A program made the position numbers and the translations under genes. Shown piece after piece: positions 17,033 through 59,984 of a DNA stretch of 64,000 nucleotides (within the stretch, counting starts at the first letter, position 1; each line of letters starts with the position of its first letter). This DNA is from Macrostomum lignano. Its lineage: Eukaryota. Under the pieces are notes generated by a model. It saw only the letters and a program-made list of their open reading frames with translations, was not told the origin of the DNA and did no database searches. The stretch lies in NCBI GenBank assembly GCA_002269645.1, contig NIVC01000363.1:588231-652230 (forward strand), given 5' to 3'.

Positions 17033-17040
17033 CTCTCCCC
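17033..17040 (-). promoter_or_regulatory. Polypurine tract (GGGGAGAG) abutting the 3' LTR
   Basis: + strand ctctcccc immediately after the LTR end. Confidence 0.9.
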
Positions 17041-17434
17041 GTTCAAATAAAGAGGCGGAGTGAAGCGGCGCGCGCTTTATTTAAAACAAAGTAAACGTGA
17101 ATTTACTGACAAAAGAAAACACACAAAATTTCAAATGCGCTCGTGAAATTGCGCGACTGGCCAGGTCGTAAAGATAGTGGCCTGATACCGCGGGGGCGCC
17201 AACCCGCTAATAGCCTGCGCCTAACTATTCCTCGTGCTCCAGCCCGCAAAATTAGTGCTCGAATTTGGTGTGGGGGCGCCGGCCCACCCTAGAAATGGCG
17301 CCTAAATATTGCGCGGGCGATACCTGAATACACAAGCCAACCGGCTTAAAATTCCTGCATAAGGGCGCTTAACTAGCGCGGCAAACGGGGCAACTTCATT
17401 GTCAACAGGGCGTACATCAGCGTACGGCCGCCAA

Positions 17435-23563: not shown

Positions 23564-23648
23564 TCGGCCGGTGACGTACGGATCAGCCTCACGCGCATGG
23601 ATTTTTTATCATCGGAGGTGTCCACGAAACCTCCGCACTCAGCCTCAC

Positions 23649-24817: not shown

Positions 24818-24927
24818 TTCAAATTAGTAGAATAGCCGAATTCTTACTCGAAAGAGCGGTTGTCTTGGGTGTAGTAGTAGTCGAATCTTGACTTGTCGGA
24901 TCCCAGATAGTCGTGTCGTTGACTCGT

Positions 24928-24950
24928 CGAATCCCACCGCTGAGTCACCA
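24928..24950 (-). promoter_or_regulatory. Primer-binding site TGGTGACTCAGCGGTGGGATTCG (tRNA-Leu-like, imperfect)
   Basis: Starts 1 nt after the 5' LTR; complementary to a ...CGAAUCCCACCGCUG..CACCA tRNA 3' end. Confidence 0.8.
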
Positions 24951-24951
24951 G

Positions 24952-35200: not shown

Positions 35201-38200
35201 GTGAGAATATTGTGTCACTGCATCGAACTAAAGCGAGAATATTGTGTCACTGCATCGAACTAAAGCGAGAATATTGTGTCACTGCATCGAACTAAAGCGA
35301 GAATATTGTGTCACTGCATCGAACTAAAAGGAGAATATTGTCACTGCATCGAACTAAAGTGAATATTGTGTCACTGCATCGAACTTAGTGAGAATATTGT
35401 GTCACGGCATGGAATCAAGGTGAGAATATTGTGTCACTGCATCGGATCAGAGTGAAATTGTTGTGTCTCTGCATCGAATATTGAGATTATTATCTGTCAA
35501 TCGAATAAGAGCTAGACTATTCATAGATTTTGCGACTCCTTAGAATATTCCATACTCAAATGTTTTCTGCCGGTCATAAAAAATGACGTTGTTTTTCTGG
35601 ATCTGTCCGATAAGTTTCGCTGTAACCTATAGCCCAGAATAAGGATAGATGCTATGCAAAGTCTATCGCCAAAAGTGTATGACCATTGCCAGGGCAATGA
35701 GTCACTGACGTATACTTATGTAGAACTGACATTTTTAGTAAACTTGCATTACGCACACACGCTCGCTCATGCACTAATTCATTGATTGGGCGCAGTATAT
35801 TAAAGCGCGCCCAGTTTATATTTATTCATCTTCCTTTGCGGCTTGCGAAATTGATTTCCTTTTTGGTGGCGGCGTTTCCCTTCCCCTCTAGCGCTAACTT
35901 TTAGGGGTCAGTTAAGGGCAAAGCGTGTCAGATGCGTCTGTCTGTCTACGACCATTCCGTATCTTCAGCTGTAAGCCTCTTGATAGAGAGTGAACTGTGC
36001 CGTTACCAAAGAGAGCTGAATAAGTGATACTTCCTGTTCTGCCGAATACGTTTCCCTCTTTTTACTACACACTGTATAGACAGGCGCGCTCTCAGAGTTA
36101 TGGTATGGTATGGTGCAACAGCTGACTTGCTTTGACATATGGTTTTCAATTTCTGGAGATGTAGATTTTTTTCTGCTGAAAGAACTAAACTGGTTTCGAG
36201 TTCATAAATGTTGCTATTGAAAACATGTAGATTGTCAAGACGACTATGTGTAGAGTGACAACTGACAAGATGATAATAACTCAGTATATAGTGCCAGAAT
36301 GACCATATGTAGAGTGCCAAGATGATAATACTTCAGTATATAGTGCCAGAATGACCATATGTAGAGTGCCAATATGATAATACTTCAGTATATAGTGCCA
36401 GAATGACCATATGTAGAGTGCCAAGATGATAATACTTCAGTATATAGTGCCAGAATGACCATATGTAGAGTGCCAATATGATAATACTTCAGTATATAGT
36501 GCCAGAATGACCATATGTAGAGTGCCAAGATGATAATACTTCAGTATATAGTGCCAGAATGACCATATGTAGAGTGCCAAGATGATAATACTTCAGTATA
36601 TAGTGCCAGAATGACCATATGTAGAGTGACAAGATGATAATACTTCAGTATATAGTGCCAGAATGACCATATGTAGAGTGCCAATATGATAATACTTCAG
36701 TATATAGTGCCAGAATGACCATATGTAGAGTGCCAATATGATAATACTTCAGTATATAGTGCCAGAATGACCATATGTAGAGTGCCAATATGATAATACT
36801 TCAGTATATAGTGCCAGAATGACCATATGTAGAGTGCCAAGATGATAATACTTCAGTATATAGTGCCAGAATGACCATATGTAGAGTGCCAAGATGATAA
36901 TACTTCAGTATATAGTGCCAGAATGACCATATGTAGAGTGCCAAGATGATAATACTTCAGTATATAGTGCCAGAATGACCATATGTAGAGTGACAAGATG
37001 ATAATACTTCAGTATATAGTGCCAGAATGACCATATGTAGAGTGCCAAGATGATAATACTTCAGTATATAGTGCCAGAATGACCATATGTAGAGTGCCAA
37101 GATGATAATACTTCAGTATATAGTGCCAGAATGACCATATGTAGAGTGCCAATATGATAATACTTCAGTATATAGTGCCAGAATGACCATATGTAGAGTG
37201 CCAAGATGATAATACTTCAGTATATAGTGCCAGAATGACCATATGTAGAGTGCCAATATGATAATACTTCAGTATATAGTGCCAGAATGACCATATGTAG
37301 AGTGCCAAGATGATAATACTTCAGTATATAGTGCCAGAATGACCATATGTAGAGTGCCAATATGATAATACTTCAGTATATAGTGCCAGAATGACCATAT
37401 GTAGAGTGACAAGATGATAATACTTCAGTATATAGTGCCAGAATGACCATATGTAGAGTGCCAAGATGATAATACTTCAGTATATAGTGCCAGAATGACC
37501 ATATGTAGAGTGCCAATATGATAATACTTCAGTATATAGTGCCAGAATGACCATATGTAGAGTGCCAATATGATAATACTTCAGTATATAGTGCCAGAAT
37601 GACCATATGTAGAGTGCCAAGATGATAATACTTCAGTATATAGTGCCAGAATGACCATATGTAGAGTGCCAAGATGATAATACTTCAGTATATAGTGCCA
37701 GAATGACCATATGTAGAGTGCCAATATGATAATACTTTAGTGTGTAGGGCCATAATAACTATATGTAGAGTGCCAAAATCCAAAACAACCATCCGTATGA
37801 AATATTTTAAAACGGAATATTTGATTGCTAAAAAGTCTATGAGCGGCAAAGGCAGGCATTTAAGAACACCAGTGCAAAAAATGAGCTTAAAAGTACCAAA
37901 ATTCGGGATCAGAAAAGCGCCGAAAGTGCTCGAGTTGTCCTGCGTGCACTGCTAATTAAGCTTTATTATCTTTCTTCAATAATCTCTTCAAATCAATTGA
38001 GTCTCCAGACTCAAACTGAAACGTCTGAAAGACCCGCAAAAGAATCTACTAAAAAAGTTCAAAATTGGGTCTTTTTTGATAAAAGAAAATTGTCGTCATT
38101 TTTTGTGGACGCCGGATGTCGCTTGTCGCAGTTTTTCCTTACCGGGGTGACAGGAAGTCGCTGAGTCCATCTAATAAGCGAACATGCAATAGACATGCAA

Positions 38201-41200
38201 AGGCACGCACTCTAAAGCTTTTCTGCTCGTATTATCGCGTGTCTGAACTGCGCAGGGTTCTCCTATGTGTATAACATCATTTTGAGCCTGTGTTATATGA
38301 AGAGTGTTCTTGTCGTTGGACAGACAGACAGTTGACTTCATTTTACGAACTATCCGATAGCTTTTCCTATATAGTCCGCCAGTGCGACTTTGGGCACTGC
38401 AGGTACACTAATTGGGTTTAGTCTTATATAAGTCTGTGTCTCTTTCCTATCTGCTAGGCCCTGTTAACTGTGTTATCATCTGGTTGCTGCTAAAGCCAAT
38501 TTGCTTCTCTTGATTGTGTGTAGTGGGTTGCCCTGATTGTTTATTCGCACATCTCCTTTCTGCTCATATGCTGCAGTTATGATGCAATCTTCATAGAAAT
38601 CAATGATCGCCCCATTAAAAGCATCATAAAAACTCTTTTTTTTCGAATTGTTAATCCCCTTAGTAGTAGTCTCTCCCCTTCTCTTCCTCTCATTTCCCTA
38701 TCTACTCTCCATTTTCCCTTTCACCCCTTCGCCATCTCTACCTTCTGTAAGTCCTGTGACTATGGTGTATCCTTGTGCCTACCTAATTTCTAGCTGGGCT
38801 TGCTTAGTCGTACGTTGACTCAATACTAGGCCTAACATCTCCCAATCTATGTGTAAAGTCGCAATGTCGCGTTTTTATCGTATCCAGAATTTTAGTGCTT
38901 GTGACTATTTGCACTTTAGTAGCTATCGGCATAATTTATTGCTATTATAATTAAACATTGCAATTTCAATTCCGTATAAGCACAGTGTACTGTACTGGCA
39001 TTAGCATGCTGGAAGCTGCTGGAACTTGCGCAAACTGGTTTTAGCTATAAATTTGCTTAGCTAGTAACTGCCTACAGGGATTCATGCTTGAACAGCCTGA
39101 ATAAACCATTGAAGCGGATTGAAGGCATTCTAGAGTTTTAAATTGTTACTCGTAAAGCTCGGAAACTTCTTCCTCGCTCAACCATGAATCTCTAAACATG
39201 AAATCTGGATAGAGGAAACTTGTAGCTCGCTTAACCATGAATCTCTAAACATGAAATCTGGATAGAGGAAACTTGTAGCTCGCTTAACCATGAATCTCTA
39301 AACATGAAATCTGGATAGAGGAAACTTGTAGCTCGCTTAACCATGAATCTCTAAACATGAAATCTGGATAGAGGAAACTTGTAGCTCGCTTAACCATGAA
39401 TCTCTAAACATGAAATCTGGATAGAGGAAACTTGTAGCTCGCTTAACCATGAATCTCTAAACATGAAATCTGGATAGAGGAACCTTCTAGCTCGCCCAAC
39501 CATGGAGCTCTAAACTTGAAATATAGATAGAGGAACCTAGCTCGCTTAACAATGAATCTCTAAATATGAAATCTGGATAGAGGAACCTTCTAGCTCGCCC
39601 AACCATGGAGCTCTAAACTTGAAATATAGATAGAGGAACCTAGCTCGCTTAACAATGAATCTCTAAACATGAAATCTGGATGGAGGAAACTTGTAGCTCG
39701 CCCAACCATGGAGCTCTAAACTTAAAATCTGGATGGAGGAACCTTCTAAGCTCGCTCAACAATGAAGCTCTAAACTTGAAATCTGGACAGGAAACTACTA
39801 GGTACCAAACAATTGTTGAGTTCTACAGCACAAGTCCCCTCCCGTAAACCCACACCGCAGTTACCCAGTACATGCAAGCACTCGGCGACAGTAGCGGCAG
39901 AAGCAGCGGCGGCAGCTTTGATCGCGACGACCTGATGACAATCGACTTCAGCCGGCATTCGGCCATTGAATCCTTTGATCTGTGCCGAGCCAGGTGGCGT
40001 CAGCTGCTGTCGGCAGCCGAGCCAGACGATCCCGAAGCCGACGCGCCGTTGGTTAACGGTGAGCGAACCAAGACCGTCTGCCTAGTGTCTGAACAGCGCG
40101 AACTGCAGCCGGGTCTGTATGTACAGCGCAGCGCCACAGTCAGCAGGACTGTTAGGCAGCCTCAGCAACAAGCCGCTCAGCAGCCGGCTGCTTCATCAAA
40201 TGAATCGGTCGCTGCCGCCACCGCTGCGCAGCTGCCGCCTCATTGCCAGGAAGATCTCAGCGATTTGCTAGTCTGGGACAATGCTAACAGTACCGCTAAT
40301 GCTACTAATAGTAGTACGTCTGGAGACGATTGCATTCTAGTTCGAGGCGGACCATTGGACGCGTTGCTAGTCTATGCCTGTCTGCCTGGCAACGACCGGC
40401 CCCATATTCTGTTCTGCGAGAGTTTCGCCGCCACTTTCCCCTGCTTTGCTAAGCCTGCCGAGCTGCTGGCCAAGATTGTGGAACGGTGCCTGCACTTTAA
40501 GGTGAGTTTCAATAGATTAGCAATCCATTCTATTCCTGCATCAGTGTAATATTGGCTAGATTAGCAATCCATTCTATTCCTGAATCAGTGTGATATTGGA
40601 TAGATTAGCAATCCATTCTATTCCTGAATCAGTGTGATATTTGCTAGATTAGCAATCCATTCTATTTCTGCATCAGTGTGTATTGGCTAGATTAGCAATC
40701 CATTATATTCCTGCATCAGTGTAATATTGGCTAGATTAGCAATCCATTCTATTCCTGAATCAGTGTGATATTTGCTAGATTAGCAATCCATTCTATTTCT
40801 GCATCAGTGTGTATTGGCTAGATTAGCAATCCATTATATTCCTGCATCAGTGTAATATTGGCTAGATTAGCAATCCATTCTATTCCTGAATCAGTGTGAT
40901 ATTGGATAGATTAGCAATCCATTCTATTCCTGAATCAGTGTGATATTGGCTAGATTAGCAATCCATTATATTCCTGAATCAGTGTGATATTGGCTAGATT
41001 AGCAATCCATTCTATTCCTGAATCAGTGTGTATTGGCTAGATTAGCAATCCATTCTATTTCTGCATCAGTGTGTATTGGCTAGATTAGCAATCCATTCTA
41101 TTTCTGCATCAGTGTGTATTGGCTAGATTAGCAATCCATTATATTCCTGAATCAGTGTGATATTGGCTAGATTAGCAATCCATTATATTCCTGCACCAGT

Positions 41201-44200
41201 GTGTGTATTGGCTAGATTAGCAATCCATTCTATTTCTGCATCAGTGTGTATTGTCTAGATTAGCAATCCATTCTATTCCTGCATCAGTTCGTATTGGCTA
41301 GATTAGCAATCCAGTTATAACGCTCTAATAATATCAAACCCCAGACCCAGACCAACAAGGACACCCTGTGGAAGTCGGCTTTTGCTTTCCTAATCCGCGT
41401 GTTGGACGAGTCGACCCAGCAGGACCGGGAGAATCGATTGAACTCATCCAGCACCGGCTCCCACTCAGCCTCCTGCTCGCCATTGATGGAGCAGCTGGCT
41501 AAACTCAAAGAGCGTCTCCTAGCGGACGGTAACCTGGCCGAAGTCCAGATCCTTGGCAGCGCTCTGCACTGCCTTCGCATTCAGCAGCAGCAGCAGCGAG
41601 ACGAAGAAGAGAACGAAAAAGCAAATTCCACTCTGTCATTGTCGACCTCCTTGTCGATAAAACGACGCAACATAGTGGAATTCAGTCCCAGACAGGTGGC
41701 CGAGCAAATTACCTTGATGGATGCCAGGTTGTATAGGAGAATCGATATTCAGGTGAGATTGCTCTACTCCCAAGAGTAGAGTCCAGGTGTGTTAAACCTA
41801 AGGTTATAGTGCCTTAATCCCATAAATGTAGTTTTAATCCCTACAATACAGTGCGGTAATCCCCCAGATTACAGTGTGTTAATCCCTCACAATGTGAGCT
41901 AATCCCTCACGATACAGTGTGTTAATTCCCTGCATACAGTGTGTTAATCCCCAGGATACAGTGTTAATCCCCAGAATACAGTGAGTTAATCCCCAGAATA
42001 CAGTGAGTTAATCCCCAGAATACAGTGTGTTAATCCCCAGAATACAGTGTGCTAATCCCTTAGGATACAGTGAGTTAATCCCCAGAATACAGTGAGTTAA
42101 TCCCCAGAATACATTGTGTTAATCCCCAGAATACAGTGTGCTAATCCCTTAGGATACAGTGAGTTAATCCCCAGAATACAGTGAGTTAATCCCCAGAATA
42201 CATTGTGTTAATCCCCAGAATACAGTGTGCTAATCCCTTAGGATACAGTGTGTTAATCCCCAGAATACAGTGTGTTAATCCCCAGGATACAGTATGTTAA
42301 TCCCCAGAATACAGTGTGTTAATCCCCAGAATACAGTGTGTTAATCCCCAGAATACAGTGTGTTAATCCTCAGAATACAGTGTGTTAATCCCCAGAATAC
42401 AGTGTGTTAATCCCCAGGATACAGTGTTTATCCCCAGAATACAGTGAGTTAATCCCCAGAATACAGTGAGTTAATCCCCAGAATACATTGTGTTAATCCC
42501 CAGAATACAGTGTGCTAATCCCTTAGGATACAGTGTGTTAATCCCCAGAATACAGTGTGTTAATCCCCAGGATACAGTGTGTTAATCCCCAGAATACAGT
42601 GTGTTAATCCCCAGAATACAGTGTGTTAATCCCCAGATTACAGTGTGCTAATCCCCAGAATACAGTGTGTTAATCCCCAGAATACAGTGTGTTAATCCCC
42701 AGGATACAGTGTGTTAATCCCCAGAATACAGTGTGTTAATCCCCAGGATACAGTGTGTTAATCCCCAGAATACAGTGTGTTAATCCCCAGAATACAGTGT
42801 GTTAATCCCCAGAATACAGTGTGTTAATCCCCAGGATACAGTGTGTTAATCCCCAGGATACAGTGTGTTAATCCCCAGAATACAGTGTGTTAATCCCCAG
42901 AATACAGTGTGTTAATCCCCAGAATACAGTGTGTTAATCCCCAGAATACAGTGTGTTAATCCCCAGGATACAGTGTGTTAATCCCCAGGATACAGTGTGT
43001 TAATCCCCAGAATACAGTGTGTTAATCCCCAGAATACAGTGTGTTAATCCCCAGAATACAGTGTGTTAATCCCCAGAATACAGTGTGTTAATCCCCAGGA
43101 TACAGTGTGTTAATCCCCAGGATACAGTGTGTTAATCCCCAGAATACAGTGAGTTAATCCCCAGAATACAGTGTGCTAATCCCCAGAATACAGTGTGTTA
43201 ATCCCCAGAATACAGTGTGTTAATCCCCAGGATACAGTGTTAATCCCCTCTGTAATCCCCGATCCCCCAGGAGTACCTGGCCTTCGTGCGCGCCAGATCC
43301 GGGGAGCAGTTTGTTAATCTGCAGGCGTTTATAAACTTTTTCAATCGCCTCGGCTTCTGGGCGAAGACGCTGGTGCTGGGCCGGCCAGCCGATCGAATGC
43401 GCGACCGGCAGCGCTTCATGAGCTTCTTCTGCAAAGTGTCCGAAGAGCTGCGGCGGCATCACAATTTCAATTCTCACCTGGCTATTGTGCTGTGTCTGGT
43501 TAGCCTGGATCGCCTGCCGTGGCCTGGTGAGATACTACTCATGAGTGATGTGTCAGTAGTAGCAATTTGCAATAAATAAAAGTACACCCCACTCAACCGC
43601 AGGCCGCTCAGTTCGCCGCAAGCTGAAGGACTTCACCAGCAAGCTGGCCAACCAGTCCGCATTTGCGCGGGAATACTTTCGCAATATGAGCACTACGGAG
43701 CCACCGCTGGTGCCTCACGTTGGCGAGGTGCTGAAATATCTGACCAGAATTCACGAGGGCGTCATTGGCAACGACGAGATCCGACAATTGCCGGCCAGTT
43801 ATCCGGTGGAGCGGGCACGGGCTGTTGGGCCAGTGATCAACTATTGGAAGTACTGGATGTCCTATAACTGCTTGGACTTTTGCATCAAATTCAAGCGCTA
43901 CTCGGCCAATTCTATGTAAGTGATTTTAACAGTATGTGCCTAAGAAATAACTCAAGCTGCTGTTAGGATTCGAACCCGTGACCGTCGAAATTAGAGATTA
44001 TGATTAGAGATTAGAGATGTTTGTCATGTCGTAGTAAATAATCTAGAAAAATGTTTTGCCTGTACCGGGATTCCAACGTGCGACCTACCGGTTAACAGAA
44101 TCGCTCGTTACACCACTGGGCTAAATCTCGTCACGTGACTTATAGTAATTTATCGGCATTTTATGTGCAAACTACGTAATAATTATTTACTCTAGAAAAT

Positions 44201-44628
44201 AATTTGCCTATACCGGGATTCGAACCTGCGACCTACGGGTTAACAGAATCGCTCGTTACATCACTGGGCTAAATCTCGTCCCGTAGCTATAAATAACTCT
44301 CATAAATAACAATCTGCCCCATAATTATTGTATTTCGCCTCTTCTGGGATTCGAACTTGGGACCGCCTGAATGGCAGATCAATCTGTTCAGTGTTCAACC
44401 ATTTAGCTCCAAGGTTACCCGCCATTTTTGGATCTGTATATCTTTATATTATGCACGAACTCGCGAACTTAACCAACTACCTGTGACCAACAAACCAGGT
44501 ACTACGAATTCCAAAGCAACCCGGAGATCCTAGCTAGCATCGACAACTTCAATGAGGCCCTCGACGAACAGCAACTGGCTGAACTCGAGACAACCATACG
44601 GCACAAGTACAGTCAGCGGCCTAAGTAG
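26251..44628 (+). CDS. RAPGEF1: C3G/RAPGEF1-like Rap guanine-nucleotide exchange factor. Exons 26251-26307, 26389-26567, 26937-27114, (29923-29966?), 30425-31120, 39861-40501, ~41351-41752, 43271-43526, 43603-43915, 44499-44628.
   Basis: C3G-like N-terminal helical region (ILATLTYLK) and PPPLPPR SH3 ligand. REM domain (VRGGPLDALLVYA, FCESFAATF). CDC25 domain (FSPRQVAEQITLMDA, HHNFNSHLAIV, PPLVPHVG). Junctions from 31120 onward are all phase-compatible; the 27114-30425 connection is unresolved. Confidence 0.8.
26640..26870. repeat. Inverted copy of the 28-bp minisatellite at 5160-5680, in GEF intron 2
   Basis: GGCCAGCCTCCCAGATCCTCAGTTGCTG units. Confidence 0.9.
27185..27320 (+). mobile_element. 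Degenerate copy of the SINE body found at 55921-56283
   Basis: Shares CAGCCACATTCATTTGGG ~ CAGTCACATTAATTTGGG and GGAGTCAGTGAAATGGGCAGAATTGCCTC ~ GGAGTCGGCGGAATGGGCAGTAATGCCTC. Confidence 0.6.
27598..27667 (-). mobile_element. tRNA-like (SINE head / pseudo-tRNA) sequence
   Basis: A-box-like TAGTTCAGTAGC and B-box GGTTCGATTCC; no intact cloverleaf. Confidence 0.5.
28245..29210. repeat. C-rich composite tandem repeat (CCTATCCCGCTACCCCCTACCCACTAC)
   Basis: Tandem C-runs; G-rich on the minus strand. Confidence 0.9.
29990..30340. repeat. 21-bp minisatellite (GATTTCGGGATTCCAGATGGG)
   Basis: 7-aa periodic ORFs. Confidence 0.92.
31190..32470. repeat. 24-bp minisatellite (CTCACTAAGAATCGCCCCTGAACC)
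   Basis: 8-aa periodic ORFs. Confidence 0.95.
32990..34110. repeat. 33-bp minisatellite (GATCTAGGGTGAGATTTCCGTGTCTCTGCATTT)
   Basis: 11-aa periodic ORFs. Confidence 0.93.
34905..35480. repeat. 32/33-bp minisatellite (GAGAATATTGTGTCACTGCATCGAACTAAAGC)
   Basis: Tandem copies, two variants. Confidence 0.92.
36255..37770. repeat. 52-bp near-perfect tandem array (~29 copies)
   Basis: Period 52 (36309, 36361); variants GCCAAG/GCCAAT/GACAAG. Confidence 0.97.
39170..39790. repeat. 53-bp minisatellite (CTCGCTTAACCATGAATCTCTAAACATGAAATCTGGATAGAGGAAACTTGTAG)
   Basis: Period 53 (39226, 39279). Confidence 0.95.
40510..41310. repeat. 42/44-bp minisatellite (AGATTAGCAATCCATTCTATTCCTGAATCAGTGTGATATTGGCT)
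   Basis: Fills the intron 40502-41350 almost end to end. Confidence 0.95.
41800..43255. repeat. 22-bp minisatellite (AATCCCCAGAATACAGTGTGTT)
   Basis: Fills the intron 41753-43270 up to the acceptor. Confidence 0.97.
43958..44412 (-). other. Cluster of 3-4 degenerate tRNA-like units (two Asn-GTT-like) in the last GEF intron
   Basis: 44058-44127 and 44206-44275 are near-duplicates with A-box TAGCCCAGTG, CTGTTAA loop and B-box GGTTCGAATCC; acceptor stems do not pair. Confidence 0.65.
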
Positions 44629-45444
44629 TAAAAAGTCTCATTTTTACTCGTTCTGGATGATACAGTAACATTCTTTTCATACTACTTTTTTATTGAGTAG
44701 CAAGCATCGATCTTATAACGCTAGATCTAGGTCATTTTACTTGCTAGTCTTTAGCTTAGAAATCAGTGTTTTATTTTTAACGCAATATACCAATTTACGG
44801 AGACAACTATCTCTTTGCTTTACTTTAAGTAGCTTTATATACTCGTATATAAAGTTAGCTCCACAACATTTTTTTTTAATTTTTAAGTCTTGGTTTTTTA
44901 TTTCTCTTGCCTACAAATTATGATTTTTATTCTAAGTTTAAATGGCTCGAATCTCTAAGAGAAACAATAGTGTTTAAATTATCAATCTATATTTATCGAA
45001 TTACTCGTAGTAGTGTATGTAGTTCAACGTTTCTCATTTTTGTCCTCTTCTTTAAAACGGAATTCCTAGTGAAACTGCGTTCCCTATACTAAAAAGTTAA
45101 AATGGCTCAAATTAAATTTGTAAATTGTTTTGTTATTTGTGTATATAAATATGCGATATATTTATTTATTTTGTTGTATTTCATGTAGTCTGATGTCCTA
45201 GCTGCCTAGTTCACATGTATAGTTTAAACATTTGCTTAATACCTATTGTATCTATTAATACGCTGCTTTGACTTTTCACTTGTGCTAAGGCCCAATTTTG
45301 ACGCAATAAATTTATATTTGAGTTGGCTGAGATTTATGAGCTTAGCCCTACACAGCACTCTTGACGCTATTTGTAGTAAAAAGCAACTGGCTATGGTGCA
45401 GAAGTTCTGCTTTCATTTTTTATTTAAAAGTTTTCATAGTTATT

Positions 45445-45990
45445 AAATTGAGTCATAGACTATCCGTGAGCTAGAGTTGTTCATCTGTCTGCTTGGCAGA
45501 TTGAGTCATAAACTATCCGTGAGCTAGAGTTGTTTATCTGTCTGCTTGGCAGATTGAGTCATAGACTATCCGTGAGCTAGAGTTGTTCATCTGTCTGCTT
45601 GGCAGATTGAGTCATAGACTATCCGTGAGCTAGAGTTGTTCATCTGTCTGCTTGGCAGATTGAGTCATAGACTATCCGTGAGCTAGAGTTGTTTATCTGT
45701 CTGCTTGGCAGATTGAGTCATAGACTATCCGTGAGCTAGAGTTGTTTATCTGTCTGCTTGGCAGATTGAGTCATAGACTATCCGTGAGCTAGAGTTGTTC
45801 ATCTGTTTGCTTGGCAGATTGAGTCATAGACTATCCGTGAGCTAGAGTTGTTCATCTGTTTGCTTGGTAGATTGAGTCATAGACTATCCGTGAGCTAGAG
45901 TTGTTTATCTGTCTGCTTGGCAGATTGAGTCATAGACTATCCGTGAGCTAGAGTTGTTTATCTGTCTGCTTGGCACATTGAGTCATACAA
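45445..45990. repeat. 53-bp minisatellite (GATTGAGTCATAGACTATCCGTGAGCTAGAGTTGTTCATCTGTCTGCTTGGCA), ~10 copies
   Basis: Period 53 (45499, 45552). Confidence 0.95.
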
Positions 45991-46394
45991 GCGTAGACTT
46001 CTGTCTGATGACAAGGCCAACATGATTGATTTCCCAATAGATTTTTTTATTTACGCATGTGTCAAAAAATTTCATTTGTAAGGTTGTCATGCAGTTTTGC
46101 ATATAAATTGAGAAAACTTTTACATGTACGTAGTACGAATTGTACTTCGTCCATTTTTTCCTCTGGATCCAGCAGAACGGCTGCACAATGGGACTAGAAC
46201 TTTCGGCTTAATTATCCTGCCTAATAAACTTTCGGCTTCTGTTTTCGAATCGTACTCGATCCACTTGGGATTTTTGAGAGGCCGGGGCGTCTATCGCATC
46301 GAATTGTAGAGTGGGAGAGTGTGACTTCGAATTCTTCTGAGTTCAGTGTGAGCAGACTTTTTTAGATTTTTATATACATTTCGATGTATTTCCA

Positions 46395-46452
46395 TACACT
46401 AGATAGATAGATGTTGGTAGATAGATAGATAGATAGATGGATAGATAGATAA

Positions 46453-46523
<71 letters not shown>
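46395..46523. repeat. (GATA)n microsatellite
   Basis: Direct reading; interrupted by the mariner insertion. Confidence 0.97.
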
Positions 46524-47492
46524 CTTCGGGTGTGTCATAAGTAATGTCACTGATGTGAAAACAGACGAACTTGCAATCGCAGATGAACAAAACTGTACCA
46601 CTCAACAACATAGAGTCCCCCAATATCAATCACCCTCTGGCAATGCTCATACAGCTTGTCCACCTCAGCCTGCAGGTGTTTTTCCTCCAACTGCCATAAC
46701 CAGTGCAACGCAGCCTGTTTTACCTCTTCATGGTTTGCGAAACTCTTCTTGGAAAAGTCAGCCTTCAGCCATTTGAACAGGAATCTCTTGCACAAGTTGA
46801 AGTCCGGGCTGTAGGGACTGTCAGAGCAGATTCACTCGCCGTGCAGGCAGAAAATTCGAAACAGCCTTCAGGTGTGCAGCCGTGCGGTGTCCATCTGCCA
46901 CAGAACCTCGTCCAGGTGACATGGATTTGACCGGAGATTGCACCAGAGGTCCCCAGTGTGCCGGAAAAAGTCGATAAAATACTGGCCATCGACCTTGATG
47001 TTCGGTGGAGTTGTGCAGATGGAGACTCGTTTGTTTGGCGTGAAGGCTACCAGCAGCATGGTCTTCTTGTCCGAGATGGACTTCCTAGTCACCATCGGCC
47101 TGAAGTCCCCAGCTCCCAACCAGCAGCGATTATCTGCCTTGCTGCCTTTGCCATCCAGGTGGAGCCAGCTTTCATCCTCAGCAACCAGGCAGTTTAGGAT
47201 GTCATTCAAGCCCCGGCTGCTAAACACCTTGCGGATCTGCTTGGTGCAGGCGTCATGTCGAGATTCATGGTGATTTTTGTTCACTGCATAAATGATTTTT
47301 CATCGCGTTGCACTTGCTAAATCTGCTTGGCGTATTCTTGCGATAGCTTGGGCCATAAACAACCTATGCACGTCTCAAATGCACTGCTATTGCTTCACTA
47401 AGTATACTTTGCAGCTACACTACCCACAAGTCCATGTGCCTACATATTTTAGACAGAGGCCTGCAGTGACATTACTTATGACACACCCGAAG
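46524..47492 (-). mobile_element. Internally deleted, inactive mariner (Tc1/mariner) transposon, 969 bp
   Basis: Perfect 29-bp TIRs (CTTCGGGTGTGTCATAAGTAATGTCACTG) with TA TSDs. Transposase motifs AEDESW, WQMDTARLH and PYSPDFNLCK. Two in-frame stops; third catalytic D replaced by K; no N-terminal HTH. Confidence 0.95.
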
Positions 47493-47914
47493 TAGATAGA
47501 TAGACATCATACAATCTAAGGTCAGGAGTGAATGCATACTTAATGTGGTGGTTGTCCAACTGTGTGTTGAGATAAAAAGCAGCGCATTCGCAATATCATG
47601 CATCGCCCATATCGGGCTGCCTCTGCGAGCTATGCATGTGGATGATTTAGCTGCTAAATGCGCTTCACAAAACTGGGATCCCTCACTCTCGGGACTTCTC
47701 TTCGGTTGGTTTTTGGCTGAATTTTTCGAATGCGCCCTCTGTTTCAGCTCAACTCCATTCCTCCCAGATGCATGGTGGAGCATATAGATGGGAAGCAAGT
47801 GCTCACTGGACTTATACGAATATGGGAGCGACGAATGAGCACTGTTTTCTAAAACCCAAAATTGGGAAATCTTCCATGGCGTGTTTTGACCAATTAAAAT
47901 TCAAGACCCTAGTC

Positions 47915-47921
47915 TATAAAA
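47915..47921 (+). promoter_or_regulatory. TATA box upstream of the Cys/His-rich gene; MRE-consensus TGCGCCC at 47731-47737
   Basis: TATAAAA ~115 nt before the ATG; a single MRE match is weak on its own. Confidence 0.5.
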
Positions 47922-48033
47922 GCGATCGAGGATATCAGAAGACGACTGCCATGCGTCTATAAGATCGCATTCTCGAGCTCTCGAATTCAAATTTTCTGGC
48001 TATCTATTATTGTTTCAACAAGTCTCCGTGAGG

Positions 48034-48835
48034 ATGTGTAAGTAATATTTATCCACTCTTGTTTCGATTTTGAATAGCATTTGTTCAGCCGTATTTGATG
48101 TCAACAGTGTACGTATTAGTTAAGAGTCGATATAAATGTACTGATATTAGGCAGTCTCTAGCAGAATGTACACAAACTAGAAAGTTCACTCTAGTTTACA
48201 TACGTTAGAATTACTGTACTTAAAATTGTACGTAGTCTAAACAGAGTTAGATAAATGCACGTAGGCTAGGCTGGCTTAGAGGGTTGGAGAAATGTACGCA
48301 GGCTAGGCTGGGTTAGAGGGTTGGAGAAATGTACGCAGGCTAGGCTGGGTTAGAGGGTTGGAGAAATGTACGCAGGCTAGGCTGGGTTAGAGGGTTGGAG
48401 AAATGTACGCAGGCTAGGCAGGGTTAGAGGGCTAGATAAATGTACGCAAGCTAGGCTGGGTTAGAGTGTTGGAGAAATATACGCAGGCTAGGCAGGGTTA
48501 GAAGGCTACAGAAATGTACATCGCAGCGAATGAACGAATCTACATAGCCTTCGCCCCATCCACCGCGCCACCGATCGACACGCAAAGCCGACCACAAATC
48601 CTGCAAGCCATGCGGCGACACTCAGCAGAAGCATTCGGCCGAATTGTGCGGCGAAAAGTGCAAATGCCCGCCTAGCGATTGCAACTCCGGCGATTGCTGC
48701 CAGAAAAACGACTGCTGTCAGTCGGAGGCTGGGAAGCAGCATCATCATCATCAGCACGGCGAGGGCGGTCACCGCCATCATCATCAGCACGAGCCTGGTC
48801 ACCAGGGGCACCATCACTCGGATCACAAGCACTGA
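48034..48835 (+). CDS. 83-aa Cys-rich/His-rich metallothionein-like protein. Exons 48034-48037 and 48588-48835.
   Basis: ATG T|GTAAGT joins AAAG|CC GAC to give MSDHKSCKPCGDTQQKHSAELCGEKCKCPPSDCNSGDCCQKNDCCQSEAGKQHHHHQHGEGGHRHHHQHEPGHQGHHHSDHKH (10 Cys, 18 His). Confidence 0.75.
48255..48510. repeat. 37-bp minisatellite in the intron of the Cys/His gene
   Basis: Period 37 (48294, 48331). Confidence 0.9.
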
Positions 48836-49249
48836 ATGTGACGCAAAATGAGCAATCAAAACTACACTGAACGTTTATTGGACTCATGTGTTTTGCTGTT
48901 GTTGGTATTATAGAACAATTATTCAGCTTTATGAAACACTGTTGCTTTTTTACATAACAAACAGCTATTAATACAAGCAACTTTATCCAGCTGTAGTGAA
49001 ATATGAGCTATTCAGAATTTTCAAACGTAAATATACAAAACAAAAAATACAGTTCAACAAGGACGGTGGTGTGCGGGTGCAATAAAATTATCGATCGCCT
49101 TCTCTAACCCCCGTTTCTCTCTCTACTGTGACTCCGCAGTTCAGGGTGATTGACTGAATGCTTGAGAGACTAGCTGAGGATGTCCAGCAGTTGAGGCTTG
49201 CCCACTGTCCAGTCTTAATCAGCGAAACTAGAGGAATTCGCAACAGGGT

Positions 49250-49490
49250 GTCCATAGTCACCTGGCGCCATCTGTTGAAGATTTTCGGCGTCGCCGCGGT
49301 CTTGTCTGGGCTGCCTTTCGTTCTGAGAGGGCGGTCCTGCAGTCCGAGGCCCAACCTGACCGCCAGAGGGCGGCGTTGTTCCAGGCGGTGGTCGAGACCG
49401 TTCTGTTGTACAACGCCGAGGCCTGGGACGCTGACGGAGCAACAAGTTGACGCGGCCCGCACTCGGCGTCTCGTTGACTGCCTGCTGGCT
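49250..49490 (+). mobile_element. Fragment of an RTE-like non-LTR retrotransposon (end of RT/thumb region)
   Basis: EDFRRRRGLVWAAFRS...ALFQAVVETVLLYNAEAW-TL matches the AWAAF...LF...V..VLLY..E.WTL motif; frameshifted. Confidence 0.8.
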
Positions 49491-50289
49491 GACGCCGGCA
49501 CCCCGGATGGTGCTGGCGCCCCTGGTGCTGGCGCCCCTGGTGCTGGCGCCTCTGGTGTTAAAGCCCCTGGTGCTAAAGCCCTTGGTGCCGGTTGAATTTG
49601 TTTTAGAAACGCTAACTGAAACTGCAATTAACTTCTGTGCGTTTGACGACTTTATAGTTAAGGATAAGTGCACCGTGTATGACACATATTTAGTTTATTT
49701 ATTTAGATATACAGGATATTGCACGTATTATCGTAATAAAATATTTGCCGAAGTTGGCTGCAGTAGATAACGTACTCAATGAAAAAAATAATGCTCATTT
49801 TAGCTGCTAGGATAGCCGTACAAACTATAATGTGCTCTTCTATTCGTATCTCTGTGCCCTAAAACCTTTGGGTCACTGCGGCAAGCAAAGGTGACGACTG
49901 CATAGTACAGCGGAGCAGGCTCATCGGCAGGCATGGAGCAAACTAAACAGAAAATAATAAAATAAAAATATCAAACAAAAAATCCGGTTTGTTACGCTCG
50001 TACGCTCGTAAAAAGTTACGCTCGTACGAGGGGAAAGGTAATATTCACAAAAATTAAAATAAATCAACGGCATCGAGACGTCACTTCTGCAGTCAATAAC
50101 TTTTCAAAACAGTTGGCAAGAAGTGCCGAGACATCCCACCCAGATCCCTTCCTTTGGTCTCTCATAAAGATAAATGGGATAAAAAGAATGAACCCAAAGT
50201 TGAAAGGATTGCGCATTTTTTCATGTTTTATTTCGTTGTTCGCTACAAACTGTCTGAGAACTTCAGTCTCTTATTACCGAAGCTAACCC

Positions 50290-52245
50290 AATCCTAAATC
50301 CTAAACCCTATCCTCCTATACTAAATCTTCTTAAATACTAAAACCTAATCTAAATCCTAAACCCTATCTTAAATCCTAAACCCTATCTTAAATCCTAAGC
50401 CCTATCCTAAATCCGCTCTATCCTAAACCCTATCCTAAACCCTATCCTAAACCCTACCCTAAACCCTACCCTAAACCCTATCCTAAACCCTATCCAAAAC
50501 CCTATCCTAAACCCTATCCTAAACCCTATCCTAAACTATCCTAAACCCTACCCTAAACCCTATCCTAAACCCTATTCTAAACTATCCTAAACCCTATCCT
50601 AAACCCTATCCTAAACCCTATCCTAAACCCTATCCTAAACCCTATCCTAAACCCTATCCTAAACCCTATTCTAAATCCTATTCTAAACTATCCTAAACCC
50701 TATCCTAAACCCTATTCTAAACTATCCTAAACCCTATCCTAAACCCTATCCTAAACCCTATCCTAAACCCTATTCTAAACTATCCTAAACCCTATCCTAA
50801 ACCCTATTCTAAACCGTATTCTAAACTATCCTAAACCCTATCCTAAACCCTATCCTAAACCCTATCCTAAACCCTATCCTAAAGCCTATCCTAAACCCTA
50901 TCCTAAACCCTATCCTAAACCCTATCCTAAACCCTATCCTAAAGCCTATCCTAAACCCTATCCTAAACCCTATCCTAAACCCTATCCTAAAGCCTATCCT
51001 AAACCCTATCCTAAACCCTATCCTAAACCCAATCCAAAACCCTATCCTAAACCCTATCCTAAAGCCTATCCTAAACCCTATCCTAAACCCTATCCTAAAC
51101 CCTATCCTAAAGCCTATCCTAAACCCTATCCTAAACCCTATCCTAAACCCAATCCAAAACCCTATCCTAAACCCTATCCTAAAGCCTATCCTAAACCCTA
51201 TCCTAAACCCTATCCTAAACCCTATTCTAAACTATCCTAAACCCTATCCTAAACCCTACCCTAAACCCTATCCTAAACGCTATCCTAAAGCCTATCCTAA
51301 ACCCTATCCTAAACCCTATCCTAAACCCTATCCTAAAGCCTATCCTAAACCCTATCCTAAACCCTATCCTAAACCCAATCCTAAACCCTATCCTAAACCC
51401 TATCCTAAACCCTATCCTAAACCCTATCCTAAACCCTATCCTAAACCCTATCCTAAACCCTATCCTAAAGCCTATCCTAAACCCTATCCTAAACCCTATC
51501 CTAAACCCTATCCTAAACCCTATCCTAAACCCTATCCTAAAGCCTATCCTAAACCCTATCCTAAACCCTATCCTAAACCCAATCCAAAACCCTATCCTAA
51601 ACCCTATCCTAAAGCCTATCCTAAACCCTATTCTAAACTATCCTAAACCCTATCCTAAACCCTATCCTAAACCCTATCCTAAACCCTATCCTAAACCCTA
51701 TCCTAAACCCTATCCTAAACCCTATCCTAAAGCCTATCCTAAACCCTATCCTAAACCCTATCCTAAACCCAATCCAAAACCCTATCCTAAACCCTATCCT
51801 AAAGCCTATCCTAAACCCTATTCTAAACTATCCTAAACCCAATCCAAAACCCTATCCTAAACCCTATCCTAAAGCCTATCCTAAAGCCTATCCTAAACCC
51901 TATCCTAAACCCTATCCTAAACCCTATTCTAAACTATCCTAAACCCTATCCTAAACCCTATCCTAAACCCTATCCTAAACCCTATCCTAAACCCTATCCT
52001 AAACCCTATCCTAAACCCTATCCTAAACCCTATCCTAAACCCTATCCTAAACCCTATCCTAAAGCCTATCCTAAACCCTATCCTAAACCCTATCCTAAAC
52101 CCTATCCTAAACCCTATCCTAAAGCCTATCCTAAACCCTATCCTAAACCCTATCCTAAACCCAATCCTAAACCCTATCCTAAACCCTATCCTAAAGCCTA
52201 TCCTAAACCCTATTCTAAACTATCCTAAACCCAATCCAAAACCCT
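50290..52245. repeat. 12-bp telomere-like satellite (CCCTATCCTAAA)n, ~2 kb
   Basis: Minus strand reads (TTTAGGATAGGG)n. Confidence 0.95.
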
Positions 52246-52438
52246 CGACAGGGCTAGGTATAGGGATGACTAAACGTGCTAAGTGACTTGACCGCGCAAA
52301 TGTTAAATTTCGCTATTCAGAAAAAGACCGCTAAGTTTCTTCATCTGATAGCGTCAGGTTGAAGACACTCGGAATGCAATACGCAGTTAAATACCTGTAA
52401 AGAGATCGCTATCTAAAGCTGACAACTGACACGCGAAT

Positions 52439-58465
<6,027 letters not shown>

Positions 58466-58619
58466 CTGCCAGATGAAGGTTAGAAATTCAATACTGCGTT
58501 CTTGTAACTGCAGCATGGCATTGGATGGATCAGCTCTAGGCTCCTGCCCGCGGGCCCGCAAAGCCTCTCTATCCGGCCCTCGATCCTTTTTAACTTCACA
58601 ATAGCAATCCGATCCTCTT

Positions 58620-59829
58620 CTCAGCTCCCTTCTCTGTAATCTCCTCTCTCTTTTTCTCTCCTCACTCCCTCTTATCTCTTCTCTTATCTCCTCTCTTGTC
58701 TCGTCTCTCTTCTCTCCTCTCTCATCTCTTTTCTCTCCTCTCTCCTCTCTCATCTCTTTTCTCTTATCTCCTCTCTTTTCTCCTCTCTCCTCTCTCCTCT
58801 CTCCTCTCTCCTCTCTCCTCTCTCCTCTCTCCTCTCTCATCTCTTCTCTCTCCTCTCTCCTCTCTCCTCTCTCCTCTCTCCTCTCTCCTCTCTCATCTCT
58901 TCTCTCTCCTCTCTCCTCTCTCCTCTCTCCTCTCTCCTCTCTCCTCTCTCATCTCTTCTCTCTCCTCTCTCCTCTCTCCTCTCTCCTCTCTCCTCTCTCC
59001 TCTCTCCTCTCTCATCTCTCCTCTCTTCTCTCTCCTCTCTCCTCTCTCCTCTCTCATCTCTTCTCTCTCCTCTCTCCTCTCTCCTCTCTCCTCTCTCCTC
59101 TCTCCTCTCTCCTCTCTCCTCTCTCATCTCTTCTCTCTCCTCTCTCCTCTCTCCTCTCTCCTCTCTCCTCTCTTCTCTCTCCTCTCTCCTCTCTCCTCTC
59201 TCCTCTCTCCTCTCTCCTCTCTCCTCTCTCCTCTCTCCTCTCTCCTCTCTCGTCTCCTCACTCCTCTCTCCTCTTTTTATTCTCTCACCTCTCTTTTCTC
59301 CCCTCTCCTCTCTCCTTCTTCCTCTCTCTTCTCTTTTCTCCTCTCTCCTCTCTCCTCTCTCCTCTCTCATCTCTTCTCTCTCCTCTCTCCTCTCTCCTCT
59401 CTCATCTCTTCTCTCTCCTCTCTCCTCTCTCCTCTCTCATCTCTCCTCTCTTCTCTCTCCTCTCTCCTCTCTCCTCTCTCATCTCTTCTCTCTCCTCTCT
59501 CCTCTCTCCTCTCTCCTCTCTCCTCTCTCCTCTCTCCTCTCTCCTCTCTCATCTCTTCTCTCTCCTCTCTCCTCTCTCCTCTCTCCTCTCTCCTCTCTCC
59601 TCTCTTCTCTCTCCTCTCTCCTCTCTCCTCTCTCCTCTCTCCTCTCTCCTCTCTCCTCTCTCCTCTCTCCTCTCTCCTCTTCATCTCTCCTCTCTTCTCT
59701 CTCCTCTCTCCTCTCTCCTCTCTCATCTCTTCTCTCTCCTCTCTCCTCTCTCCTCTCTCTCTCTCCTCTCTCCTCTCTCTCTCTCTCCTCTCTCCTCTCT
59801 CCTCTCTCCTCTCTCCTCTCTCCTCTCTC

Positions 59830-59865
<36 letters not shown>

Positions 59866-59950
59866 CTCTTTTCTCCCCTCTCCTCTCTCCTTCTTCCTCT
59901 CTCTTCTCTTTTCTCCTCTCTCCTCTCTCCTCTACTCTCTCCTCTTATTC
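58620..59950. repeat. Polypyrimidine (TCCTCTC)n low-complexity array
   Basis: Direct reading; source of the 420-aa Leu/Ser ORF and the ERGERRE ORFs. Confidence 0.97.
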
Positions 59951-59984
59951 GCCTCTAAGAAGTCATGCGCTAAGTTCTCGATTA

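What the first reader, a model, noticed from the sequence alone, without database searches (positions are those of the whole stretch)
47731..48835. Bipartite metal-binding mini-protein: metallothionein-like Cys cluster fused to a His-rich tail
The gene is missed by the ORF track because exon 1 has only 4 coding nt (ATG T). The 83-aa product has 10 Cys in CxxC, CxC and CC motifs, then 16 His in the last 31 residues, and no aromatic residues. It has a TATA box, one MRE-consensus site and nGAAn-like repeats near 47970-47990. Animal metallothioneins are typically His-poor, so a two-chemistry chelator (thiolate for Cd/Cu/Zn, imidazole for Ni/Zn/Cu) may be an undescribed family.
Basis: partly seen in the sequence, partly recalled or inferred. 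Interest (0 to 1): 0.7.

Follow-up and report, generated by a model that had tools for sequence, protein, structure and literature searches.

The report
Flatworm orphan Cys/His-rich mini-protein gene
A real, transcribed two-exon gene of the flatworm Macrostomum lignano encodes an 83-residue protein with a metallothionein-like cysteine half and a poly-histidine tail; it matches no described protein family, sits in GenBank only as a 'hypothetical protein', and its metal-binding role is plausible but untested.

Summary
The gene model is correct. ATG+T (48034-48037), a GT..AG intron (48038-48587) and exon 2 (48588-48835) give the 83-aa protein as described: 10 Cys, 18 His (16 in the last 31 residues), no Phe/Trp/Tyr.

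The window is Macrostomum lignano DNA. The RNA-seq-derived GenBank annotation joins the same two exons (PAA84756.1). A duplicated locus has the same structure (PAA64456.1, 95% identical). Between the copies, exons are 98-99.6% identical and the intron 88-92% with many indels. The only coding indel is one whole His codon.

No relative was found. Pfam gave 0 hits at E<=10. phmmer against 1.84 billion representatives found only the protein itself. PDB gave nothing. AlphaFold2 confidence was low.

The regulatory reading fails. The single MRE core occurs at chance frequency and is lost in the paralog. The nGAAn repeats are at chance level and lie inside the 5'UTR.

The best reading is a lineage-restricted, disordered cytosolic metal chelator: a thiolate-cluster domain plus an imidazole tail. 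It works like a metallothionein but belongs to no described family. Metal binding is inferred from composition only. The two copies are too similar to test selection. Interest is moderate.

The parts
47890..47894 (+). CCAAT box candidate
   Evidence: The motif is present and conserved at the equivalent position of the paralog L001 (4857).. Its function is inferred only.
47915..47922 (+). TATA-like box TATAAAAG
   Evidence: Conserved in L001 (4882). It lies 13-20 nt upstream of the 5' end of the deposited transcript-derived CDS, which is somewhat short for a canonical TATA-to-start distance..
47935..48037 (+). Exon 1: 5'UTR plus the first 4 coding nucleotides (ATG T at 48034-48037)
   Evidence: The deposited partial CDS of NIVC01000363.1 begins at window 47935. 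It reads through the UTR in frame: 33 extra residues, then the 83-aa protein. A at -3 of the ATG. An in-frame TAA at 47917-47919 excludes a longer ORF.
47951..47962 (+). Three-codon upstream ORF (ATG CGT CTA TAA) in the 5'UTR
   Evidence: Read directly from the sequence. The paralog keeps it as ATG CAT CTA TAA. Any regulatory role is inferred only.
48038..48587 (+). Intron, 550 nt, GTAAGT...AAAG
   Evidence: The paralog has the same donor and acceptor and a 568-nt intron. Identity between the copies is 88-92% with 74 gap columns, far lower than in the exons.
48246..48519 (+). 37-bp minisatellite inside the intron (7.4 copies)
   Evidence: Tandem Repeats Finder score 429, 89% matches. It is also present in the paralog's intron.
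48588..48835 (+). Exon 2 coding part, including the TGA stop
   Evidence: It is 98.4% identical to the paralog, with 4 substitutions and one whole-codon (CAT) indel.
48602..48718 (+). Cys-rich half (Cys7 to Cys45: CxxC, CxC, CC, CC; 10 Cys, 22% of the first 45 residues)
   Evidence: All 10 Cys are identical in the paralog.
48740..48832 (+). His-rich tail (residues 53-83; 16 His in 31 residues)
   Evidence: Built from imperfect repeats HHHHQHGEGGHR / HHHQHEPGHQG / HHHSDHKH. Tandem Repeats Finder reports a 33-nt period with 1.9 copies at 48743-48803.
48836..49105 (+). 3'UTR with AATAAA at 49081-49086 (3' end approximate)
   Evidence: AATAAA found. The stretch 48836-49090 matches the paralog at 254 of 255 bases. 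Identity falls to 95.8% downstream.

Best explanation
This is a genuine, transcribed, lineage-restricted gene of Macrostomum lignano (Mlig034277.g2). It encodes a 9.3-kDa, very hydrophilic, probably disordered cytosolic protein that most likely acts as a metal chelator or buffer with two ligand chemistries.

The N-terminal half carries 10 Cys in CxxC, CxC and CC-x4-CC arrangement. It would fold around a metal-thiolate cluster. By analogy with 9-11-Cys metallothionein domains, it would hold roughly 3-4 Zn(II)/Cd(II) or more Cu(I).

The C-terminal 31 residues carry 16 His. They would bind borderline ions (Zn, Ni, Cu(II), Co) more weakly and more labilely. They could act as extra storage capacity or as a capture arm feeding the cluster.

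Shown: the gene structure, that it is transcribed (as deposited), the composition, the absence of a signal peptide or hydrophobic segment, and the absence of homologs.

Inferred: metal binding, stoichiometry, metal preference, and any role in detoxification or homeostasis.
For: Gene and transcript:
- The window is identical to NIVC01000363.1, and the deposited CDS joins 48037 to 48588.
- That annotation was built from RNA-seq (StringTie/TACO, BLAT-mapped de novo transcripts) with TransDecoder ORFs (PMC5730564).
- The paralog has the same structure.

Constraint on the mature mRNA:
- Identity to the paralog is 98.4% in the CDS, 99.6% in the 3'UTR, 88-92% in the intron and 94-96% in the flanks.
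- The only coding indel is one exact codon.

Metal-ligand composition:
- 10 Cys and 18 His in 83 aa, no aromatic residues, GRAVY -1.79, no 9-residue window with positive hydropathy, MW 9288.
- It is the strongest Cys+His outlier of 351 open frames.

Disorder: AlphaFold2 gives mean pLDDT 58.8 and pTM 0.29, as expected for an apo-thionein-like chain.

Precedents:
- His residues complete metal sites in metallothioneins, for example the His3Cys Zn site of C. elegans MTL-1 (PMC11134313).
- Small His-rich proteins with CC pairs store Ni. Hpn has 28 His and two EEGCC motifs and binds 5-6 Ni per monomer (PMC5312948).

Context:
- Parasitic flatworms are reported to lack recognisable metallothionein genes (PMC3561135).
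- M. lignano is reported to tolerate Cd up to about 330 uM (PMC11641670). This is circumstantial only.
Against: - There is no experimental or evolutionary test of function.
- The only two sequences are about 95% identical recent duplicates. Conservation of all 10 Cys therefore carries little weight.
- pN/pS is 0.63 on just 4 substitutions, which is uninformative.
- Overall Cys content (12%) is below the 15-30% typical of metallothioneins.
- No metal-responsive promoter signal exceeds chance.
- No homolog exists anywhere else in the searched collections. A young orphan with no selected function cannot be excluded.
- The His runs are encoded by CAT/CAC repeats and could have arisen by slippage.
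- There is no protein-level evidence.
Confidence: 0.5

Rival explanations
1. The protein is real and translated, but its role is not metal storage or detoxification. The His runs and low-complexity sequence could act as a localisation or condensation module. His repeats target human proteins to nuclear speckles (own knowledge: Salichs et al. 2009). The Cys half could be a small structural zinc knuckle mediating an interaction.
For: - Cys content is only 12% overall and spacing is looser than in classical metallothioneins.
- No MRE support.
- The 3'UTR is even more conserved than the CDS, at 99.6%. This hints at post-transcriptional control typical of regulatory genes.
Against: - No similarity to any zinc-finger or other Pfam domain, even at E<=10.
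- No confident fold.
- Two adjacent CC doublets and a CxC are typical of thiolate clusters rather than of single structural Zn sites. This point is own knowledge.
Confidence: 0.2
2. This is a young orphan transcript whose ORF has no selected protein function. The frame would be a by-product of a CAT/CAC microsatellite-like expansion and a GC-rich exon. It was picked up by TransDecoder because it is the longest ORF.
For: - No homolog among 1.84 billion representative proteins or 5.8 billion clusters.
- pN/pS of 0.63 on 4 changes does not show purifying selection.
- The tail has a tandem-duplication structure.
Against: - Exons are much better conserved than the intron and flanks between the duplicates.
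- The sole coding indel is in frame.
- Apart from a 3-codon uORF, the ORF starts at the first AUG of the mRNA, in a good context (A at -3).
- The start codon is split by the intron in both copies, yet the frame is preserved.
- The composition is extremely non-random.
Confidence: 0.2
3. This is a secreted His-rich or Cys-rich antimicrobial or adhesive peptide, like histatins or shepherins.
For: Small size and His-rich sequence. M. lignano is an intertidal animal with a specialised adhesive system and microbiota. This is context only.
Against: - There is no signal peptide. The N-terminus MSDHKSCKPCGD is polar, and the maximum 9-residue Kyte-Doolittle hydropathy is -0.17.
- There are no hydrophobic residues beyond one Leu and two Ala.
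Confidence: 0.03

Closest known systems
Metallothioneins in the operational sense; the closest animal example is C. elegans MTL-1, whose C-terminal extension supplies His ligands
   Same: - Under 10 kDa, with no aromatic residues.
- Cys in CxC, CC and CxxC motifs.
- Hydrophilic and probably unfolded without metal.
- A His-containing C-terminal part next to a thiolate-cluster part. In MTL-1 this forms a His3Cys Zn site (PMC11134313).
   Different: - No sequence similarity to any Pfam metallothionein family, even at E<=10, or to solved metallothionein structures.
- 10 Cys (12%) against 18-20 Cys (25-33%).
- 18 His (22%) against 1-4 in animal metallothioneins (PMC4101491).
- The tail is a 31-residue poly-His module, not a few ligands completing one site.
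- Metal induction and binding are untested.
Helicobacter pylori Hpn and Hpn-like (small cytosolic His-rich nickel-storage proteins)
   Same: - A 7-9 kDa cytosolic protein.
- Runs of His combined with CC doublets. Hpn has two EEGCC motifs.
- Multi-ion, non-cooperative, reversible binding is the expected behaviour (PMC5312948).
   Different: - Bacterial, with no detectable homology.
- In Hpn, His and Cys are interleaved (46.7% His). Here they are segregated into two halves.
- Hpn serves urease and hydrogenase maturation. No such nickel demand is known for the flatworm, and this was not tested.
His/Cys-rich C-terminal metal-binding tails of H. pylori HspA (GroES) and E. coli SlyD
   Same: Disordered tails mixing His runs and Cys pairs that bind several Ni/Zn/Bi ions. 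SlyD binds 3 Ni per monomer (table). The title of Cun et al. 2008 is listed. Details of tail composition are from own knowledge.
   Different: Those tails are appendages of folded chaperones. Here the whole protein is the metal-ligand module. There is no homology.
His-containing metallothioneins of bacteria (SmtA, Cys3His sites) and plants (Ec-1, Cys2His2 site)
   Same: His takes part alongside Cys in metallothionein metal sites and tunes Zn versus Cd selectivity (PMC11134313).
   Different: In those proteins a few His residues are embedded in the Cys domain. There is no poly-His module and no sequence similarity.

Membership tests
Metallothionein (operational definition) | Low molecular mass (under about 10 kDa) | tested here: met
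   83 aa, 9288 Da.
Metallothionein (operational definition) | High Cys content (about 15-30%) in CxC, CC and CxxC motifs | tested here: inconclusive
   The motifs are present: CKPC, CKC and two CC. Cys is 12% of the whole protein and 22% of the first 45 residues.
Metallothionein (operational definition) | No or very few aromatic residues; His scarce | tested here: inconclusive
   F, W and Y are all zero, so that part is met. His is 21.7% of residues, so that part is not met.
Metallothionein (operational definition) | High metal content bound in metal-thiolate clusters | not testable with these tools
   Needs recombinant protein with ESI-MS, ICP and spectroscopy.
Metallothionein (operational definition) | Metal-inducible transcription (MRE/MTF-1 type promoters in vertebrates and insects) | tested here: not met
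   There is one MRE core in 1 kb upstream. The window frequency is below random expectation (31 against 48). The paralog has none. Induction itself was not measured.
Any curated metallothionein sequence family in Pfam-A | Match to the family HMM | tested here: not met
   hmmscan of the 83-aa protein gave 0 families at E<=10.
Nematode metallothioneins (MTL-1/MTL-2 type) | Sequence similarity, including the conserved 18-Cys pattern | tested here: not met
   - No Pfam hit.
- phmmer against all PDB chain sequences gave only one non-significant, non-metallothionein hit at E=1.3.
- phmmer against 1.84 billion representatives found only the protein itself.
Hpn / Hpn-like nickel-storage proteins | Sequence homology | tested here: not met
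   No hit in the exhaustive phmmer search.
Hpn / Hpn-like nickel-storage proteins | Reversible binding of several Ni(II) ions per monomer | not testable with these tools
   Needs biochemistry.

The most novel reading that the evidence does not exclude
This could be the first metallothionein-type protein of Platyhelminthes, a phylum whose parasitic members are reported to lack metallothionein genes. It would be a de novo, lineage-specific one: a bipartite chelator with a 10-Cys thiolate-cluster domain fused to a poly-His module. The two halves would divide labour between soft ions (Cd, Cu(I), Zn) and borderline ions (Ni, Zn, Cu(II)). Or the tail would capture ions and hand them to the cluster.
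Probability: 0.35. Interest if true: 0.6.

Novelty: new variant of a known kind. Interest (0 to 1): 0.45.

Why it matters
Flatworms are widely used in ecotoxicology, and parasitic flatworms are said to have no metallothionein genes. Phytochelatin synthase has therefore been proposed as their main metal defence (PMC3561135).

A genuine metallothionein-like chelator in a transgenesis- and RNAi-capable flatworm would matter in three ways:
- It would give a testable candidate for the missing thiolate buffer.
- It would add an independently evolved metallothionein-type protein, supporting the view that these proteins arise repeatedly.
- It would offer a natural example of a thiolate domain fused to a poly-His module, useful for studying metal selectivity.

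If it turns out to be an unselected orphan ORF, it is simply a correctly annotated hypothetical gene.

Tried and rejected
- **Word-indexed homology search with the full 83-aa protein.** It found only the M. lignano cluster.
- **Exhaustive phmmer of the paralog protein against 1.84 billion representatives.** It found the protein itself plus P0003, a 237-aa repeat artefact with no real similarity.
- **Pfam at E<=10.** Nothing.
- **PDB sequence search at E<=10.** One meaningless hit at E=1.3.
- **AlphaFold2 on a single sequence.** pLDDT 58.8. I therefore ran no fold search, because a low-confidence model gives meaningless matches.
- **Rfam on the whole window.** No hit.
- **Inverted repeats around the gene.** Nothing relevant.
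- **tblastn of the protein against the window and L001.** No further copy.
- **Literature.** No paper mentions Mlig034277. Supplements of two M. lignano expression papers contain no entry for it, and a third has no supplements held. No paper links M. lignano to a metallothionein gene.
- **Other Cys- or His-rich open frames in the window** (57144-57461, 8347-9069, 13808-13993). The first two are translations of simple tandem repeats. 13808-13993 is a short Cys-rich frame with no similarity to the gene. None is related.
- **Trans-splicing to the exon-2 acceptor.** I considered a spliced leader ending in AUG, as known in schistosomes (own knowledge). AUG joined to CCGACC... gives a different frame that stops after about 28 codons. 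The deposited cis-spliced model explains the long frame.
- **Searches not run.** I ran no further search on the Cys half alone. A 45-residue query cannot reach significance in a database of 5.8 billion sequences.

Full report
**What is in the sequence**

At 48034-48037 the + strand reads ATG T, followed by GTAAGT. At 48586-48587 an AG precedes CCGACCAC. The frame then runs to TGA at 48833-48835. Joining the two pieces gives a 252-nt CDS and this 83-residue protein:

MSDHKSCKPCGDTQQKHSAELCGEKCKCPPSDCNSGDCCQKNDCCQSEAGKQHHHHQHGEGGHRHHHQHEPGHQGHHHSDHKH

- It has 10 Cys, at residues 7, 10, 22, 26, 28, 33, 38, 39, 44 and 45. These form CxxC, CxC and two CC motifs.
- It has 18 His, of which 16 fall in the last 31 residues.
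- It has no Phe, Trp or Tyr.

Exon 2's frame is open from a stop near 48545 but contains no in-frame ATG. A mechanical ORF list therefore shows only a 63-aa TTG fragment. Among all 351 stop-to-stop frames of at least 60 codons in the window, this one has the highest Cys+His fraction. It is 31.6% against a mean of 5.8% and sd of 4.2%.

**Where the window comes from, and the existing annotation**

A protein search returned one cluster from Macrostomum lignano. It has two members:
- PAA64456.1 (BOX15_Mlig034277g1), 82 aa, 95% identical to the window protein.
- PAA84756.1 (BOX15_Mlig034277g2, partial), 116 aa. It is exactly the window's 83-aa protein preceded by 33 residues that are the in-frame translation of the 5'UTR.

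The contig carrying g2, NIVC01000363.1, is identical to window 37935-58835. Its deposited CDS spans window 47935-48835.

That genome's gene models were derived from RNA-seq and a mapped de novo transcriptome. The methods were StringTie, TACO and BLAT, with ORFs called by TransDecoder. Transcripts at least 95% identical share a name prefix (PMC5730564). The 48037|48588 junction is therefore part of a transcript-derived public annotation. I could not inspect the reads myself.

The 116-aa 'partial' form is an artefact of an ORF open to the transcript's 5' end. The frame has a TAA at 47917-47919, and no in-frame ATG precedes 48034. There is no longer upstream ORF.

**Gene anatomy**

| Feature | Window coordinates | Note |
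|---|---|---|
| CCAAT | 47890-47894 | conserved in the second copy |
| TATAAAAG | 47915-47922 | conserved in the second copy |
| Exon 1 | about 47935-48037 | 5'UTR plus ATG T |
| uORF | 47951-47962 | 3 codons (MRL*), kept as MHL* in the paralog |
| Intron | 48038-48587 | 550 nt |
| Minisatellite | 48246-48519 | 37-bp unit, 7.4 copies, inside the intron |
| Exon 2 coding part | 48588-48835 | includes the stop |
| 3'UTR | 48836 to about 49105 | AATAAA at 49081-49086 |

The main ATG has A at -3. The TATA box lies only 13-20 nt upstream of the deposited 5' end. This is compatible with a promoter but somewhat short, and the true start site is unresolved.

**The second copy**

L001 (NIVC01001749.1) is syntenic with the window over about 14 kb, from window 42219 to 56436. 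The shared region includes the upstream RasGEF gene, and identity is 85-96%. This fits the known redundancy of this assembly, which comes from duplicated chromosomes. L001 has the same ATG T|GTAAGT...AAAG|CC structure.

Identity between the copies by segment:

| Segment | Identity |
|---|---|
| Upstream | 95.0% |
| TATA to 5'UTR | 94.1% |
| Intron | 88-92%, with 74 gap columns |
| Coding exon 2 | 98.4% |
| 3'UTR | 99.6% (254/255) |
| Downstream | 95.8% |

The only coding indel is one exact CAT (His) codon. Exons are better conserved than the intron and flanks, and the coding indel is in frame. Both argue that the mature mRNA and its frame are under constraint, although gene conversion could contribute.

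The four coding substitutions are D3E, K8Q, R64G and one synonymous change. They give pN/pS = 0.63, which is uninformative. All Cys are identical, but at this divergence that says little.

**Regulatory motifs**

The MRE core TGCRCNC occurs 31 times in the window against 48 expected from shuffles. The one site at 47731-47737 lies about 185 bp upstream of the TATA box. In the paralog it reads TGCGCCA, and the paralog has no core within 1 kb upstream or in its intron.

The 'nGAAn' stretch at 47970-47988 matches a three-unit heat-shock element only with two mismatches. Such matches occur 189 times against 219 expected. It also lies inside the annotated 5'UTR. Neither motif supports metal or heat regulation. 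Induction itself remains untested.

**Homology and structure**

- Pfam-A gave no family, even at E<=10.
- phmmer of the paralog protein against 1.84 billion cluster representatives found the protein itself and one spurious repeat protein.
- The PDB sequence search gave a single non-significant hit at E=1.3.
- AlphaFold2 without an alignment gave mean pLDDT 58.8 and pTM 0.29. This is as expected for a chain that only folds around metal, so I ran no fold search.
- There is no further copy in the window.
- The collection's cluster holds only the two NCBI entries. Flatworm transcriptomes are evidently not covered, so 'no homolog' means 'none outside M. lignano in annotated genomes and metagenomes'. 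It does not mean the gene is absent from other macrostomids.

**Most likely mechanism**

The protein is 9.3 kDa. Its GRAVY is -1.79, and no 9-residue window has positive hydropathy. It has no signal peptide or membrane segment and should be cytosolic or nuclear.

A third of its residues are strong metal ligands, and they are segregated into two halves. The Cys half has 10 Cys, including DCCQKNDCCQ. It resembles a single metallothionein domain in ligand count. From established metallothionein chemistry, 9-11 Cys bind 3-4 divalent ions or more Cu(I).

The tail consists of three imperfect HHH-initiated units, and Tandem Repeats Finder sees a 33-nt duplication. It resembles natural poly-His metal-storage sequences.

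I therefore rate 'bipartite cytosolic metal chelator or buffer' as the best explanation, at about 0.5. The gene and its transcription are shown. Metal binding, stoichiometry and physiological role are inferred.

Rival readings:
- A non-chelator role for the low-complexity His and Cys modules (0.2).
- An unselected young orphan ORF (0.2).
- A secreted peptide (0.03), contradicted by the polar N-terminus.

**Comparison with what is known**

Functionally, the nearest kinds are two. The first is metallothioneins that recruit His, above all C. elegans MTL-1 with its C-terminal His3Cys Zn site (PMC11134313). The second is the bacterial His-rich proteins with CC pairs, Hpn and Hpn-like, and the His/Cys tails of HspA and SlyD (PMC5312948).

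Membership in any of these as a sequence family was tested and not met. Under the operational definition of a metallothionein, size, motifs and lack of aromatic residues are met. Cys density is borderline. His scarcity is not met. Metal content cannot be tested here. So it may work like a metallothionein, but it is not a member of a described metallothionein family.

**Novelty and importance**

The gene is already public, but only as a hypothetical protein. No paper in the searchable library mentions it or any M. lignano metallothionein. Parasitic flatworms are reported to lack metallothionein genes (PMC3561135). A candidate in a free-living, genetically tractable flatworm is therefore worth testing.

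Lineage-specific metallothionein-like proteins are found regularly, and here function is purely compositional inference. I rate it a new variant of a known kind, with interest 0.45.

Noticed in passing
window 15900-25251 (- strand ORFs 17435-20287, 20278-21339, 21299-23563, 23858-24817): An LTR retrotransposon of Ty3/gypsy type. Its ORFs carry RVT_1, RNase H and integrase domains. It is flanked by direct repeats at 15900-16199 and 24952-25251 that are 100% identical over at least 300 nt, so the insertion is probably recent. The pol region is split over several ORFs.
   Followed up: partly
window 48836-49090 vs L001 5818-6072: The 3'UTR of the gene matches the duplicate at 254 of 255 bases. That is more conserved than the coding sequence (98.4%) and the flanks (about 95%). 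It could reflect post-transcriptional control or local gene conversion.
   Followed up: no
window 47951-47962: A three-codon upstream ORF (ATG CGT CTA TAA) lies in the 5'UTR. The paralog keeps it as ATG CAT CTA TAA.
   Followed up: no
window 48246-48519: A 37-bp minisatellite (7.4 copies) fills half of the intron. It is also present in the paralog's intron with a similar copy number.
   Followed up: partly
window 41834-43248 and 45447-45987: There are two large tandem arrays: a 22-bp unit in 64 copies and a 53-bp unit in 10 copies. The 22-bp array lies within the annotated RasGEF gene range (window 37935-44628); the 53-bp array lies downstream of that range. Both are shared with the duplicated locus.
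   Followed up: no
window 46523-47492: This stretch is about 970 bp here but only about 277 bp in the duplicated locus (L001 4185-4461). It lies about 420 bp upstream of the TATA box. It contains a 138-aa ORF (46868-47284, - strand) with no Pfam match, even at E<=1. It may be a remnant of a mobile element.
   Followed up: partly
window 50392-51000 and 50001-52000: A 12-bp satellite, ATCCTAAACCCT, is present in about 51 copies. GC skew is extreme there, at -0.82. Further strongly skewed blocks lie at 52001-56000 (+0.48) and 58001-60000 (-0.71).
   Followed up: no
window 943-3816 (-), 9122-9715 (-), 37935-44628 (+): Neighbouring genes are a protein kinase split over two ORFs, a BTB/POZ-domain ORF, and a 955-aa RasGEF gene upstream of the finding.
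   Followed up: partly
window 57144-57461 (-), 8347-9069 (-), 31194-32470 (-): Simple tandem repeats here translate into long repetitive 'proteins': (CLSV)n, (GMHHLSDPET)n and a 24-nt repeat. They inflate the ORF lists and are not related to the finding.
   Followed up: yes
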